Shown here one piece after another: positions 39,201-44,335 of a DNA stretch of 64,000 bases. Every line of letters starts with the position of its first letter. Position 1 is the stretch's first letter. The stretch lies in contig PDIP01000007.1 in the NCBI GenBank assembly GCA_002811645.1, forward strand, positions 62,001-126,000, written 5' to 3'. Made by a program: the position numbers and the translations under genes. Origin of the DNA: Corallochytrium limacisporum Hawaii (taxonomy: Eukaryota; Protista; Pluriformea). The notes beneath the pieces were generated by a model. That model was given only the letters and a program-made list of their open reading frames with translations, had not been told where the DNA came from and made no database searches.

Positions 39201-41525
39201 ATGTCCTCCAACGGACCAGCTGTGGTAACCACCTCCTCCAATGGATCCGTGACTGCACGGTCCACAGGATCAGGCGAATTACGAGGCAGTGCAGAACGGC
39301 TGGAGAAAAAGAGTGTCAGTGCGATAAATTTGGCATCAGAAGCCGAAAAGGCGCGCAAGCAAATGAATAAACAGCTTCAACGGGGTCAGAGTGCAGTAGC
39401 ATTGACTGCTGGAGAGGAAATGCGCGCAGCAGCGGCCGCGGATCCTGATTACTCTCCGCGCCCGACGTATAACTACACAAAGGACAGCGCCGGTGTTCAC
39501 GTAAGCGATATAGAGAAGGCCAAGAGAAAGTACAAAGAAGAGAAGGAAGCTAGAGAACGGCGAACAAAATTGAACTTGTCGACGTCTCTCATGTCCGGAC
39601 GGCTCAAAATGCGTAGGAGCATGATCAAGGTCTGGGAAGTCTTCCACTTCGAATTAAAGCCGGGTATTTTGTATTGGAAGACAGATGCAAACGCTCAAGA
39701 CTACAAAGGCTCGGTGCTGCTGGCAGGCACTGTGACTGTGGAACGGCCGTCGAAGAAAGGGGGGTTCTGCTTCAAGATATACCATCCACTGAAGCATGGT
39801 ATTTACGGACCCGAGGCTTTCTTCCAGACGGACAACTGTATTCTACGCGCCGCCGACAAGGAAACCGGTATTAGATGGATGGCAAACCTGGTCAAGTGTG
39901 CTCGTATGCCAATCGAACCCACTCAAGGTCTTCCAACATCATGGTCTTTGAATGAGGAAGACAGTACACAGTATATGGACACTGAGATTGCGGATGATGC
40001 CGAGTCATGGGACGATGATTCAACATCTCCCGGTAAGATGTCCAAGTACGTCGAAAATCGGGCGGACCTGGTTGACGTAGTGCAGGCGCAGGAGGAGGAA
40101 TTACAGGAGGAATCAAAGAGCCTCATTTGGATCTTGGCGAAGCAGGTACGCATTGGCCAGGATCTATCGAAGGTAGTGCTGCCCACGTTCATCTTGGAGC
40201 CCCGGTCTTTCTTGGAAAAGGTGAGTGACTTTTTCACGCACTGCGACTTCCTCAGCCGTGCGGCTGCGTCCAAAGGCGAAGATCGTCTGCTGAATGTAGT
40301 CCGCTGGTTCCTCTCTGGATTCTATCTAAAACCGAGGGGTGTAAAGAAGCCGTATAACCCGATTTTGGGTGAGACATTTCGCTGCTGCTGGGACGACCCT
40401 GTCTCAAATGCAAAGACCTTCTACGTCTCGGAGCAAGTTAGTCACCATCCTCCGGTTTCCGCCTTCTACGTCCAGAATAGGCGCGCTGGCTTTGTCATTT
40501 CTGGGTCGGTGAACCCGCGGTCCAAGTTCTATGGCAACTCTGCCGCCTCTATTCTGGATGGTACAGGCTATATTCAGTTCCTGGACAATGGCGAGGTTTA
40601 CGAATTTACGTTCCCTAATGGCAATGTCAAGGGCGTCTTGGTTGGTACCCTGAGCTATGAATATGGTGGCGAAGTATCCATCGTGTGTCAGCAGAGCGAT
40701 CTTCGCGCTGAAATCAAATTTGAAATGAAACCAATGTTTGGTGGCAAACTTAACGTTATTTCTGGAAAGGTCAAGGAGGGTAAGGACACCTTGTACACAC
40801 TCAAGGGATTCTGGGACAATGCGATTGAGCTTATTCCCGAGTCGGGATCGAAGCCTAAGGAGACGTTGTGGAACCCGGCCGCCAAGGATCGCCCGCCTCG
40901 TTGCACGCGCTATGTCGTCGACCCAGAGTATTGCTGGGAGACTGACTCTCAGGTCCTGTGGGACAAGGTGACGAAAGCAATCAAGGCAGATGACCAACAA
41001 CTTGCGACACAGGAGAAGAACGTCCTTGAACAGGAGCAACGCGATGCCGCAAAGAGGCGCAAGGAACTCAAGGAAGAATATGTTCCAAACTTCTTTGTCC
41101 GGGACATGAATACCGCAACATCACATAGTTATCGGTTCGTGCATGCTGAGAGCTGGAAAGACTCTGAAGAGTACGAATACGAATGGCAGGGTCTGCTCTA
41201 CTCGAAACGTAAGGGTGAGCAAGAACCGGAGCCATCGAAACCCGAGCACTCCCGACCGCCTGCAGTTCATGTTCGGAAGAAGAAGAACTCGAAGGTGAGA
41301 CGTAGCGGAGTGGAAGGACTCGGTGATGATGACGATGAGATGGCTAATGGAGGCCAAATGGTTGGCATCGGAAACCAGGGCAACCTGGCTGATCGTCGTC
41401 ATCGCCAAGTGGTTCAAGAACTACAAAGCGTGCGCAAGGATATCAAGGCCCTTGTCCGCATTGTCATTGTACTGGCAGCGCTTCAAACCATTATTATTGC
41501 TGGCATGGCCATGGGATACCTGTAA
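39201..41525 (+). CDS. OSBPL8: Oxysterol-binding protein-related protein, ORP5/ORP8 type (PH + ORD + C-terminal TM)
   Basis: PH domain (ERPSKKGGFCFKIYHP), DLSKVVLPTFILEPRSFL, KKPYNPILGETF, EQVSHHPP, C-terminal TM anchor. Confidence 0.9.
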   Translation: MSSNGPAVVTTSSNGSVTARSTGSGELRGSAERLEKKSVSAINLASEAEKARKQMNKQLQRGQSAVALTAGEEMRAAAAADPDYSPRPTYNYTKDSAGVHVSDIEKAKRKYKEEKEARERRTKLNLSTSLMSGRLKMRRSMIKVWEVFHFELKPGILYWKTDANAQDYKGSVLLAGTVTVERPSKKGGFCFKIYHPLKHGIYGPEAFFQTDNCILRAADKETGIRWMANLVKCARMPIEPTQGLPTSWSLNEEDSTQYMDTEIADDAESWDDDSTSPGKMSKYVENRADLVDVVQAQEEELQEESKSLIWILAKQVRIGQDLSKVVLPTFILEPRSFLEKVSDFFTHCDFLSRAAASKGEDRLLNVVRWFLSGFYLKPRGVKKPYNPILGETFRCCWDDPVSNAKTFYVSEQVSHHPPVSAFYVQNRRAGFVISGSVNPRSKFYGNSAASILDGTGYIQFLDNGEVYEFTFPNGNVKGVLVGTLSYEYGGEVSIVCQQSDLRAEIKFEMKPMFGGKLNVISGKVKEGKDTLYTLKGFWDNAIELIPESGSKPKETLWNPAAKDRPPRCTRYVVDPEYCWETDSQVLWDKVTKAIKADDQQLATQEKNVLEQEQRDAAKRRKELKEEYVPNFFVRDMNTATSHSYRFVHAESWKDSEEYEYEWQGLLYSKRKGEQEPEPSKPEHSRPPAVHVRKKKNSKVRRSGVEGLGDDDDEMANGGQMVGIGNQGNLADRRHRQVVQELQSVRKDIKALVRIVIVLAALQTIIIAGMAMGYL

Positions 41526-41988
41526 GTGAGGAGCTGCTTCCCAACTACACCATATGTCGCTTGTCATGGGCATCACTCAGATATTTGACTGACAATAGAA
41601 ACTTTCAACTATCCTACATATCCCTGCCGGAGAACCTGTCCTGTAATTGATCAATATTTTTCCACCGACTCCAAGTTCTTACCCACTCGATGAGGACCAA
41701 AAAACAGCCCGGTCCTCGCTACTCCGGGCAATTCACTTCCCGCCCCTTAGAAAACATAAGGTAGGGTACTGTGGCCTCCCGTGGTTCTGGCTTTTGAGAA
41801 CCCATGTGGGCCGGGGAGGGCTGGGGTTTTGGTTGTAAGCAGGAAAACGATTGGGTGCGCCCCACACACAAGAACAATAGATACACCCGCCAAGCAGGCC
41901 AGTTTCTAGTAGAGTTTTTCATCGCAAAAGTTAGGTTCAACTGATTTGTTTTCTTCCCACAGCGAGAGAATAACTTGAAATACCATTG

Positions 41989-42252
41989 GAACGCGTGTTC
42001 GTGGAGAACCGGACCTTGTCAGTTGTAGTACTGTGGTCACTACACCTTGAGGCTAAGCGGAACGGCTGCCAGCTAATGGGGACTGACGAAAACAGAAGCA
42101 CACATTCCCGACTAATATCGAAACCGCCCCCCGTGGCATGGCGTGGCTAGTGTTGGGGTTCCGGTTTGCACATCGCGTTTAACGCCATGAGTGCGGTTAC
42201 ACTTCCTCGACTCCACACAAGAGTAACCGACAGTCCGGAAGCGTTGTTTTTT
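41989..42252 (+). ncRNA. Candidate structured RNA element (unidentified)
   Basis: Several nested complementary segments found by eye, G-U pairs favouring the + strand, terminal T6 run; no known family motif recognised. Confidence 0.25.
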
Positions 42253-42422
42253 CTGTGACATTATGTCCATCTTGATAAATCGCTACTATCGAGTAAAGTT
42301 CTCTGTAGTGATAAAGCAGCTACAAAGGAATCTGCGAAAGTACTACAAGGGCAACTCATGTGCGAAATTGCATTGTTCGCTCTCAATAGGGAACAAGGCA
42401 AAGTCTAAATATATCTTCAAAC

Positions 42423-43376
42423 ATGTCTACCGCTGGACAAACGGCAGGTAGCCTGTCTAAGTACATCATTCCGGCTGTTGCCGTTGGTGTTGCTGCTTTC
42501 GTCGGCTATGCCATCTACTTTGACAGCAAGCGTCGGTCCGATCCAGAGTACAAGCAGAAGGTCGCTGAGAAGCGCCGTCAGCGCAAGCTCGCCGATGAGG
42601 CCCGGGCTAAGCGGGAAGCCGAGGAAGCCGAGGCGCAGAAGGCTGCCCAGGCTGCTCAGGGAGGTCCTGGTGGCATGCAACCCCCGAGCAACGAGGAGGC
42701 TGAGCGCATCCAACAGTTCCTGATGGAGGGTTTCAAGAAGGGTGATGAGCTCCTCGCGGCCAACAAGGTCGAGGACGCTGTCACTCACTACATCGATTTT
42801 ATCGTAGAGGCCGACGAGAAGGCACTAACCAGCTCTACCTATCTGCTCCTGATGCTGGAGACCCGTCTGATTCAAAACGAGATGAGCAGCACCTTCATGC
42901 TTTTGATGACGAAGTTCGAGGACCACATGCAGAAGCTGAGCAAGGAACAGCGGGAGGTTATCGAGCTCAAGCAGGCTGGTGACAAGGCTGTCGCAGCTAA
43001 GGACGACGACTTGGCTGTCAAGAAGTACGTGGACGCGGTTGCCAAGGCAGACACCATTGCCCGCCTCACCATGATTGAGATGATCCAGCAGAAGGTTAGC
43101 CCCGAGACAATGGATACTTTCGTCAGCAAGCTGCCGAAAGAGCTGAGTGAATTTGTGAACGAGAAGATGAAGGCCGAGAAGATTCTCCTCGAACTGATCT
43201 CTAAGAAGGACCAGACTCCTACGGACCCCAAGGACGTCGAACGTATGATCAAGCACTTTGCCAACGCTATCAGGGTTTCTGACCAGCAGACTCAGATGGT
43301 CATGCTGCAGTCTCTGCAACAGCTTCTGGACCCGTCTCTTCTGCAGTTGCTTGTCCGGGAACTCACAGAGGGTTAA
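42423..43376 (+). CDS. TOM20: Mitochondrial import receptor Tom20, extended (three receptor domains)
   Basis: Signature TM-GYAIYFDSKRRSDPEYK, followed by three Tom20-like helical repeats; 317 aa. Confidence 0.9.
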   Translation: MSTAGQTAGSLSKYIIPAVAVGVAAFVGYAIYFDSKRRSDPEYKQKVAEKRRQRKLADEARAKREAEEAEAQKAAQAAQGGPGGMQPPSNEEAERIQQFLMEGFKKGDELLAANKVEDAVTHYIDFIVEADEKALTSSTYLLLMLETRLIQNEMSSTFMLLMTKFEDHMQKLSKEQREVIELKQAGDKAVAAKDDDLAVKKYVDAVAKADTIARLTMIEMIQQKVSPETMDTFVSKLPKELSEFVNEKMKAEKILLELISKKDQTPTDPKDVERMIKHFANAIRVSDQQTQMVMLQSLQQLLDPSLLQLLVRELTEG

Positions 43377-43710
43377 AGGATTGCAGCATTATCATTCCAT
43401 CATCGGATAAACATTGGGCATTGTTTTCCTACTCGGGCCGCAAGCCGTCTGTGTAACGTTAAATTAAAGCATTTATCAATATAGGGCACTGACTAGCATT
43501 GGATGAGTTCAGAGCGAATGTTTTTGACGAAGTTTTCACTTTATTTCAGACTTGGAGTAGAAAAACTTATGTGACGATGATTCGCCTCTGTAAGAAGTGT
43601 CCGCTTTCAAGGGGAATCCCAAGAGATAGCATGCCATGTGCAGACCCTAAAGTACGACGCAAGGGCCCAGAACGAATACATACCATCAAGATTTCCCGGA
43701 TCACGCTAAA

Positions 43711-43780
43711 TGCATGTCCTTCAACTCTCCGAGAGCGCGTTGGCTTTATTCCCGGGAATGTCATAGTGAAAGAGGTTGCA
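43711..43780 (-). promoter_or_regulatory. SECIS element (eukaryotic, type II-like) of MsrA
   Basis: Minus strand reads AUGA-C-AUUCCCGGGA-AU-AAA-GCCAACGCGC-UCUCGGAGAGU-UGAA, i.e. AUGA-N13-AA-N23-GA; 10-bp helix II with one bulge; UGCA/UGCA outer helix. Confidence 0.85.
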
Positions 43781-43846
43781 AACTCCCGTCGAGTGTATCA
43801 AGTCCTTGCCATGGAGTTCTCAAACATGACAGCAATTGGAGCATAT

Positions 43847-44335
43847 TTAGCGATAAGATTTCGCAATATACTTTTGATGGTACTCCTCAGCATCATACCA
43901 ACTGCCGGCCTTCTCCAGAGCCGTGTTACTCTTGGTCTTGTGGAGCCCTTCGTAAGCCTTCTTGGCATTCAGAGCCGCCTTCTTTTGCTCATCGTCTAGA
44001 TAGAAGATGGCACTACGGTATTGTACGCTGCGGTTCATACCACGAGAGTTATGGGAGTTAAAGAATTTGTTCAACAACTCATCGGTTGATATCTGGGAGG
44101 GATCGTATTCAATGCGCACCGTCTCTGTGTGGTCTCCCATCCAATGGTACGTAGGGTTCTTCTTCTTGCCACCAGTATAACCGACAGTGGTTTTCAGCAC
44201 CCCAGGTGTGGCGTCGTACATCACCTGAGGATGCCAGAATCATCCGCTTGCGAGGTAAATGACCTGCGCTCCGGACTTTTCCGGAACAGCGGGGACGGCC
44301 CTGTCCTCCGATTTCAATTTGTCGAGGAAACCCAT
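43847..44335 (-). CDS. MSRA: Selenocysteine-containing peptide methionine sulfoxide reductase A (162 aa, Sec32)
   Basis: ATG at 44335 reads MGFLDKLKSEDRAVPAVPEKSGAQVIYLASG-TGA(44242-44240)-FWHPQV in frame into the track's ORF (VGYTGG, PTY, DHTE, QYRSAIF, AEEYHQKY). The TGA occupies the catalytic Cys position of GCFW. Confidence 0.93.

What the first reader, a model, noticed from the sequence alone, without database searches (positions are those of the whole stretch)
42705..43364. Tom20 with a triplicated presequence-receptor domain
Seen: after the canonical TM-YFD..RRSDP anchor come three related units. R1 (aa ~95-165) KKGDELLAANKVEDAVTHYIDFIVEAD...FMLLMTKF; R2 (~175-237) QAGDKAVAAKDDDLAVKKYVDAVAKAD...MIQQKVSPETMDTFVSKL; R3 (~243-314) ...MIKHFANAIRVSD...MLQSLQQLLDPSLLQLLVREL. 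Known: animal and fungal Tom20 have one such domain and are about half this length. Inference: a multivalent or sub-functionalised import receptor, possibly compensating for a changed Tom22/Tom70 set. I know of no described precedent.
Basis: partly seen in the sequence, partly recalled or inferred. Interest (0 to 1): 0.8.

Follow-up and report, generated by a model that had tools for sequence, protein, structure and literature searches.

The report
Tom20 receptor with three binding domains
A single-celled relative of animals makes its only Tom20, the receptor that recognises proteins bound for mitochondria, with three tandem copies of the signal-binding domain instead of one. None of about 140 other Tom20 proteins I scanned has more than one copy.

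Summary
The intronless ORF 42423-43376 (+) encodes a 317-aa opisthokont-type Tom20 (Pfam MAS20, 89.8 bits). It has an N-terminal membrane anchor, the conserved juxtamembrane motif and a charged linker. Three in-register copies of the four-helix receptor domain follow: R1 aa 88-171, R2 172-238, R3 239-316.

- **Sequence.** A profile of 103 canonical receptor domains scores R1 at 35.8 bits, R2 at 17.5 and R3 at 31.3. None of 500 shuffles per unit reaches its score.
- **Structure.** In an alignment-free AlphaFold model, R2 superposes on rat Tom20 (Z 11.6, rmsd 1.4 Å, 64/64 residues). An alignment-based R3 model also hits Tom20 first (Z 7.0, middling).
- **Not an artefact.** The ORF has no DNA-level repeats. 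Gene-sized contigs from two public runs span the whole ORF without joints.
- **Uniqueness.** Of 151 proteins scanned, 135 have one receptor domain and only this one has three. The 149-aa Tom20 of the ichthyosporean Chromosphaera is among the 135.

Compensation for missing receptors is not supported: Tom22, a Tom70-like protein, Tom7 and porin-family barrels are all present. R1 keeps the presequence-groove residues; R2 and R3 keep them only partly. Multivalent binding is therefore possible but untested. Verdict: a real new variant of a known receptor, of moderate interest.

The parts
42380..43440 (+). Probable mRNA: extent of gene-sized contigs from two public runs (1039 and 1054 nt)
   Evidence: Contigs lie at 42380-43418 (X2) and 42389-43440 (X1), with no joints. 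Depth is zero in 41964-42327 for both runs. Between this contig and the next one downstream it is 1.49 (X1) and 0 (X2) in the 43511-43601 bin. The only difference inside the ORF is A>G at 43151, third base of Glu-243, which I read as synonymous. The runs are labelled 'RNA?' as a guess.
42423..43376 (+). Tom20 ORF, 317 aa, intronless, stop codon included
   Evidence: Pfam MAS20 2e-25, 89.8 bits against a cut-off of 27. No ATG in 42380-42422. It is the only MAS20 locus in the 24.1-Mb genome.
42462..42521 (+). N-terminal transmembrane signal-anchor, aa 14-33
   Evidence: A hydrophobic stretch read directly from the sequence. It aligns with the membrane anchor of human TOM20 (query aa 18-60 to chain residues 7-51).
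42522..42554 (+). Conserved juxtamembrane motif (DSKRRSDPEYK), aa 34-44
   Evidence: Near-identical to the animal motif DRKRRSDPNFK.
42555..42683 (+). Charged Lys/Glu/Ala/Gln-rich linker, aa 45-87
   Evidence: Sequence. AlphaFold predicts a helix at 41-69 followed by a low-confidence coil.
42684..42935 (+). R1: first Tom20 receptor domain, aa 88-171, with 5- and 4-residue loop insertions
   Evidence: 35.8 bits over profile positions 2-69 of 71. Groove equivalents are Q97, L100, M101, F104, D108, E109, L111, L141, M144, L145, R148 and L149; all but R148 (for rat Thr113) are identical or conservative. Predicted helices at 90-112, 116-132, 138-151 and 155-171.
42936..43136 (+). R2: second Tom20 receptor domain, aa 172-238
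   Evidence: 17.5 bits over profile positions 15-71. In the alignment-free model, aa 172-237 superpose on rat Tom20 2v1s_F residues 63-126 with Z 11.6, rmsd 1.4 Å, 64 of 64 residues. The groove is altered at K183 (rat Ile74) and K188 (rat Glu79).
43137..43370 (+). R3: third Tom20 receptor domain, aa 239-316, with about 8 extra residues in the loop between helices 1 and 2
   Evidence: 31.3 bits over profile positions 29-70. Pfam MAS20 profile positions 66-131 match at 8.2e-6 on this piece alone. The alignment-based model has pLDDT 81.5. Its best solved-structure matches are Tom20: Z 7.0, rmsd 3.4 Å, 64 of 64 residues.

Best explanation
This is the organism's only Tom20, the presequence receptor of the mitochondrial outer-membrane translocase.

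Shown: an N-terminal signal-anchor, the conserved basic juxtamembrane motif and a roughly 45-residue charged linker. Three tandem copies of the four-helix, TPR-like Tom20 receptor domain follow, joined by turns of 2-3 residues.

Inferred: the array arose by two internal duplications within this lineage. They are old enough that no DNA similarity remains and the units share only about 20-30% protein identity.

Inferred mechanism: R1 keeps nearly all residues of the hydrophobic presequence groove and its acidic rim, so it is the canonical presequence-binding site. R2 and R3 keep the hydrophobic face of helix 3 but differ at key helix-1 positions. I think they most likely act as extra, lower-affinity or differently tuned binding surfaces for amphipathic targeting helices. 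That would raise avidity or let one receptor hold several targeting-like segments of a precursor at once.
For: - **Family.** MAS20 at 89.8 bits. Human TOM20 aligns to the anchor, to helix 1 of R1 and to helices 2-4 of R3.
- **Three domains.** Three in-register profile hits. Per-unit scores are 35.8, 17.5 and 31.3 bits, with 0 of 500 shuffles reaching them.
- **Fold.** R2 matches rat Tom20 at Z 11.6 and rmsd 1.4 Å in a model made without any alignment. R3 has Tom20 as its eight best structural matches.
- **Helix pattern.** Four helices per unit, with 2-3-residue breaks between units.
- **Groove map.**, using residues named in PMC9041937 and PMC11160474.
- **Real gene.** No DNA repeats. Gene-sized contigs from two runs span the whole ORF.
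- **Copy number.** A single Tom20 locus in the genome.
- **Lineage origin.** All three units end helix 2 with Asp (EAD, KAD, VSD), as does the single domain of Chromosphaera Tom20 (VSD). The units fall in one small group in a quick tree.
Against: - No binding data exist.
- R2 has Lys at the position of rat Ile74, in the middle of the groove. R3 has Asn at Leu71 and Ser at Val109 (my reading of alignment A1). These changes could abolish presequence binding.
- The very short inter-unit turns suggest a rigid helical solenoid, in which some grooves could be buried.
- R1's fold rests on the profile match and predicted helices only.
- The R3 model was driven by an alignment of canonical Tom20s, and its Z of 7.0 is middling.
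- The tree grouping is weakly supported and prone to long-branch attraction.
- No orthologue with the same architecture was found, so conservation of the extra units cannot be judged.
Confidence: 0.72

Rival explanations
1. There is one working site plus a spacer. Only R1 binds presequences. R2 and R3 are degenerate copies kept as a rigid helical extension, for example as a platform for other partners, or they are drifting neutrally.
For: R2 and R3 have non-conservative changes at groove positions: Lys for Ile74 and Lys for Glu79 in R2, Asn for Leu71 and Ser for Val109 in R3. R2 scores only 17.5 bits against the canonical profile. The inter-unit turns are 2-3 residues.
Against: All three units keep an intact four-helix pattern and the hydrophobic helix-3 face. 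R3's helices 2-4 are the best match in the protein to animal Tom20, up to 39% identity. That is unexpected for a decaying copy. The ORF is open and appears well represented in transcript-like contigs.
Confidence: 0.23
2. It is a single Tom20 domain split by an unrelated helical insertion. Helix 1 at aa 90-122 and helices 2-4 at aa 272-314 would form the one receptor domain, and aa 123-271 would be foreign.
For: The first Pfam and solved-structure matches look like this. Human TOM20 aligns to aa 86-122 and then to aa 272-314.
Against: R1 alone aligns over the whole receptor-domain profile, positions 2-69 of 71. R2 alone matches the profile and superposes on rat Tom20 over all 64 residues at rmsd 1.4 Å.
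Confidence: 0.03
3. It is an artefact: an assembly collapse or expansion, or a fused gene model.
For: Several long Tom20 entries in databases are fusions with other domains.
Against: It is one uninterrupted ORF with no direct DNA repeats at seed 8. The units are only 20-30% identical. Contigs of 1039 and 1054 nt from two runs in two studies each cover the whole ORF without joints.
Confidence: 0.02

Closest known systems
Animal/fungal (opisthokont) Tom20, Pfam MAS20 PF02064; rat and human TOM20 structures 1om2, 2v1s, 7vc9
   Same: N-terminal signal-anchor, the RRSDP juxtamembrane motif, a charged linker and the four-helix TPR-like receptor domain with a hydrophobic groove. R1 keeps equivalents of Gln67, Phe70, Leu71, Ile74, Glu78, Glu79, Leu81, Leu106, Val109, Leu110 and Leu114.
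   Different: There are three receptor domains instead of one, and 317 aa against a median of about 164. It has no helix 5 or acidic C-terminal tail, since the protein ends just after helix 4 of R3. R1 has two loop insertions and R3 has one.
Chromosphaera perkinsii Tom20 (P0024, EukProt EP01135, 149 aa), an ichthyosporean and the only non-animal holozoan among the ten hits whose names I looked up
   Same: 34% identity over the anchor, linker and start of R1. It shares the helix-2 ending VSD with R3.
   Different: A single receptor domain of ordinary length.
Plant Tom20 (convergent receptor)
   Same: A presequence receptor built from more than one TPR-like motif. From the literature it is independent of the opisthokont type (PMC5455965).
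   Different: From my own knowledge, plant Tom20 is C-terminally anchored and unrelated in sequence. This protein is N-terminally anchored, and each of its units is homologous to opisthokont Tom20.
Tom70 and other multi-TPR import receptors
   Same: An N-terminally anchored array of helical repeats. Whole-model fold searches list Tom70, Sti1 and other TPR solenoids at low significance.
   Different: No significant TPR family match: TPR_BSK1_C scores 15-17 bits against a cut-off of 42.2. The genome has its own Tom70-like protein.

Membership tests
Tom20 (opisthokont type, Pfam MAS20 PF02064) | Match to the family profile above the curated cut-off | tested here: met
   89.8 bits against a cut-off of 27, E 2e-25, in two stretches. 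It is the only such locus in the genome.
Tom20 (opisthokont type, Pfam MAS20 PF02064) | N-terminal single transmembrane anchor followed by a basic juxtamembrane motif | tested here: met
   aa 14-33 are hydrophobic and are followed by DSKRRSDPEYK. This region aligns with residues 7-51 of human TOM20.
Tom20 (opisthokont type, Pfam MAS20 PF02064) | Cytosolic four-helix TPR-like receptor domain | tested here: met
   Present three times. R2 scores Z 11.6 and rmsd 1.4 Å against 2v1s. R3 scores Z 7.0. R1 is supported by profile and predicted helices only.
Tom20 (opisthokont type, Pfam MAS20 PF02064) | Conserved hydrophobic presequence groove and acidic rim | tested here: inconclusive
   In R1, 11 of 12 mapped positions are identical or conservative. 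R2 and R3 are conserved on helix 3 but changed at helix-1 positions (residues from PMC9041937 and PMC11160474).
Tom20 (opisthokont type, Pfam MAS20 PF02064) | Binds presequences and associates with the Tom40/Tom22 core | not testable with these tools
   Needs biochemistry. The partners Tom22, Tom7 and porin-family barrels are encoded in the genome.
Tom20 (opisthokont type, Pfam MAS20 PF02064) | Single receptor domain (the usual architecture, not a definition) | tested here: not met
   Three domains here. 135 of the relatives scanned have exactly one.
Canonical TPR repeat proteins (Pfam TPR clan) | Match to a TPR family above its cut-off | tested here: not met
   Only TPR_BSK1_C, at 15.4-17.5 bits against a cut-off of 42.2, within R2.
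Plant-type Tom20 | C-terminal anchor and a plant-type TPR domain | tested here: not met
   The anchor is N-terminal and the sequence is opisthokont-type. That the plant feature is a C-terminal anchor comes from my own knowledge.

The most novel reading that the evidence does not exclude
All three domains are working binding sites. That would make this a naturally multivalent Tom20 that grips long or multiple targeting-like helices of one precursor at once, or binds several precursors. It would be a route to higher receptor avidity different from the Tom20-Tom22 cooperation known in yeast and animals, and it could be tested in a transfectable protist.
Probability: 0.3. Interest if true: 0.65.

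Novelty: new variant of a known kind. Interest (0 to 1): 0.5.

Why it matters
Tom20 is the textbook presequence receptor. It binds its ligands weakly and dynamically through one small groove.

A natural receptor with three tandem grooves offers a way to ask how valency and spacing affect targeting-signal recognition. It also allows the question of whether duplicated grooves have diverged toward other ligands, such as internal targeting-like segments or chaperones.

It also shows that the opisthokont receptor can be remodelled within a lineage, here in a close relative of animals, even when Tom22 and Tom70 are present.

A paper title listed reports stable transfection of that organism, so domain deletions could be tested in vivo.

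Tried and rejected
- **Word-index protein search.** It was swamped by low-complexity words and returned only the protein itself and one nematode Tom20.
- **BLASTP of R2 against R3.** It found nothing, so profiles were needed.
- **Foldseek on the whole low-confidence model.** No match at E <= 0.001, although a Tom20 chain ranked first at E 0.022.
- **Metagenome scan with the cytosolic part.** No relatives.
- **ESM Atlas feature search of R2+R3.** All scores were 0.87 or lower, so it was uninformative.
- **Literature searches.** No description of a multi-domain Tom20. The library is incomplete.
- **Long database Tom20s.** Ten proteins of 276-665 aa are not multi-domain. Each has one MAS20 stretch plus other domains or an extension.
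- **Careful tree of the units.** It did not finish in the time allowed. Only the quick tree is reported, and it puts the three units in one weakly supported small group.
- **Complex prediction with a presequence.** Not run. It would not say which unit binds, and a negative result is uninformative for weak, dynamic interactions.
- **Organism name.** Not given by any tool. Corallochytrium is inferred from the 24.11-Mb genome size and the absence of introns.

Full report
**The gene**

The stretch 42705-43364 lies inside a single uninterrupted ORF, 42423-43376 on the + strand, of 317 aa. Its neighbours are also long intronless ORFs. One is a 774-aa ORF that ends at 41525.

The genome holds 24,109,830 bases in 286 contigs. 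That size and the lack of introns fit Corallochytrium limacisporum, described as 24.1 Mb with 0.0 introns per kb of coding sequence (PMC5560861). No tool named the organism, so this is an inference. Earlier notes of this scan on the same genome also call it a single-celled relative of animals.

**Family**

Pfam MAS20, the Tom20 family, matches at 2e-25 with 89.8 bits against a cut-off of 27. Human TOM20 chains align to three places:
- aa 18-60, the membrane anchor and the RRSDP motif;
- aa 86-122, helix 1 of the receptor domain;
- aa 272-314, helices 2-4.

Taken alone, that pattern could mean either a domain split by an insertion or a repeated domain.

**The repeat is real**

I built a profile from 109 canonical Tom20s, 125-225 aa long, fetched by an exhaustive HMMER search. 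It gives three in-register domain hits on the protein, at aa 12-177, 180-249 and 270-315.

A profile cut down to the receptor domain alone (103 sequences, 71 positions) gave these scores, each compared with 500 shuffles of the same unit:

| Unit | Score (bits) | Profile positions matched | Highest shuffle (bits) | Shuffles reaching the score |
|---|---|---|---|---|
| R1 | 35.8 | 2-69 | 12.7 | 0 of 500 |
| R2 | 17.5 | 15-71 | 8.2 | 0 of 500 |
| R3 | 31.3 | 29-70 | 10.6 | 0 of 500 |

The N-terminal 85 residues score -1.4 bits. R1 and R2 align directly at 30% identity, E 2e-5. A shifted self-alignment of R1R2 on R2R3 spans 138 columns at E 9e-4. R2 against R3 alone is undetectable by BLASTP.

**Fold**

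An AlphaFold model made from the single sequence, with no alignment, has mean pLDDT 60. It predicts four helices per unit with only 2-3 residues between units:
- R1: 90-112, 116-132, 138-151, 155-171;
- R2: 174-191, 195-208, 211-224, 227-235;
- R3: 239-260, 269-284, 288-301, 304-316.

R2 is the weakest unit by sequence but the best predicted, with pLDDT 80-91. In that model, aa 172-237 superpose on rat Tom20 (2v1s_F residues 63-126) with Z 11.6 and rmsd 1.4 Å over all 64 residues. The eleven top rows are all Tom20 chains.

I modelled R3 (aa 236-317) with an alignment of canonical domains plus R1 and R2 (A1). It reaches pLDDT 81.5. Its eight best solved-structure matches are Tom20, the best at Z 7.0 and rmsd 3.4 Å over 64 of 64 residues. 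That Z is middling, and the model is not independent of the alignment.

R1's fold rests on its full-length profile match and the predicted helices.

**Not an artefact**

The ORF holds no direct DNA repeats at a seed of 8 bases. The duplications are therefore old and are not an assembly error.

Contigs from two public runs in two studies cover the whole ORF without joints: 1054 nt at 42389-43440 and 1039 nt at 42380-43418. Depth is zero upstream (41964-42327) in both runs. Between this contig and the next one downstream it is 1.49 in one run and zero in the other. The neighbouring genes lie on separate contigs. That is the pattern of a transcriptome, although the runs are labelled RNA only as a guess.

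The single difference inside the ORF, A>G at 43151, is the third base of Glu-243. I read it as synonymous. There is no ATG between the contig start and the ATG at 42423.

**Uniqueness**

The exhaustive search of 1.84 billion cluster representatives found 247 hits at E <= 0.001. Only the protein itself scored above 61 bits.

I ran the receptor-domain profile over the 151 fetched proteins. Of these, 135 have exactly one domain hit and only this protein has three. Ten long hits of 276-665 aa each have one MAS20 stretch plus zinc fingers, MYND and SET domains, or an extension.

Chromosphaera perkinsii, an ichthyosporean, has an ordinary 149-aa Tom20. Its helix 2 ends in VSD, like R3. R1 and R2 end it with EAD and KAD, whereas animals have VCG. 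This fits an origin of all three units from one lineage-type domain.

A quick tree places the three units in one small group, but with weak support and long branches. No relative turned up in metagenome contigs. No paper in the searchable library describes a multi-domain Tom20.

**Binding residues**

Two papers name the groove residues of rat and human Tom20 (PMC9041937; PMC11160474). I mapped them through the profile alignment. For helix 1 of R3 I read the equivalents by eye from alignment A1.

| Rat/human Tom20 | R1 | R2 | R3 |
|---|---|---|---|
| Gln67 | Q97 | not aligned | S242 |
| Phe70 | L100 | V179 | V245 |
| Leu71 | M101 | I180 | N246 |
| Ile74 | F104 | K183 | M249 |
| Glu78 | D108 | D187 | E252 |
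| Glu79 | E109 | K188 | K253 |
| Leu81 | L111 | V190 | L255 |
| Leu106 | L141 | M217 | M294 |
| Val109 | M144 | M220 | S297 |
| Leu110 | L145 | I221 | L298 |
| Thr113 | R148 | K224 | L301 |
| Leu114 | L149 | V225 | L302 |

R1 is conservative at all positions but one. In R2, extrapolating the gap-free structural superposition gives the same helix-1 register and puts Q176 at the position of Gln67.

R1 therefore looks like a canonical site. R2 and R3 keep the helix-3 hydrophobic face but carry a charged or polar residue at one or two central helix-1 positions.

**The compensation idea**

- **Tom22.** The genome encodes a Tom22 (86.1 bits). Its N-terminal region is short and holds one acidic cluster.
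- **Tom70.** It encodes a Tom70-like protein in a 635-codon ORF. This protein has a hydrophobic N-terminal anchor and an acidic linker. It aligns at aa 151-600 with residues 111-583 of human TOM70.
- **Tom7 and barrels.** It encodes Tom7 and three porin-family barrels.

Nothing suggests that a receptor has been lost.

**Reading**

It is shown that this is a Tom20 with three tandem receptor domains and that it is the only Tom20 in the genome.

It is inferred that it arose by internal duplication in this lineage. It is also inferred that R1 is the canonical presequence site, and that R2 and R3 are extra binding surfaces of changed specificity. The alternative is that R2 and R3 form a structural extension. 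The short inter-unit turns favour a fairly rigid helical array, but no tool here could test the packing between units.

Noticed in passing
P0129, P0132, P0136, P0150 (database proteins, 483-665 aa): Four separate 50%-identity cluster representatives carry an N-terminal Tom20 (MAS20) domain followed by SET, and three of them also carry a MYND finger. One is annotated as Tom20 of the fungus Basidiobolus ranarum. This could be a recurrent gene-model fusion or a real Tom20-anchored SMYD-like methyltransferase.
   Followed up: partly
window 41964-42327: The stretch upstream of Tom20, where another first-stage note proposes a ~260-nt structured RNA at 41989-42252, has zero contig depth in both runs that cover the flanking genes. 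Contigs can drop rare or non-polyadenylated RNAs, so this is weak evidence of absence.
   Followed up: partly
window 43601-44300: A separate contig in both runs covers the stretch that holds the minus-strand methionine sulfoxide reductase-like ORF 43847-44224. It extends downstream of that ORF to 43601 (X1) and 43662 (X2), about 160 nt from the end of the Tom20 contig. Other first-stage notes place a SECIS element at 43711-43780. One run has a 1-base insertion behind 43622 and four substitutions here.
   Followed up: no
G000:C25:107126-107779 (L014): A third, weak porin-family match (43 bits, 302-aa open frame) sits beside two strong ones at 212 and 202 bits. It may be the divergent Tom40-like barrel flagged by another first-stage note.
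   Followed up: no
G000:C250:230916-231218 (L003 1462-2031, minus strand): The Tom22 here probably starts at MAKGKKGS. It has a basic N-terminus and one short acidic cluster (EEIDDSVFDGDE), not the long acidic extension described for fungal and animal Tom22.
   Followed up: partly
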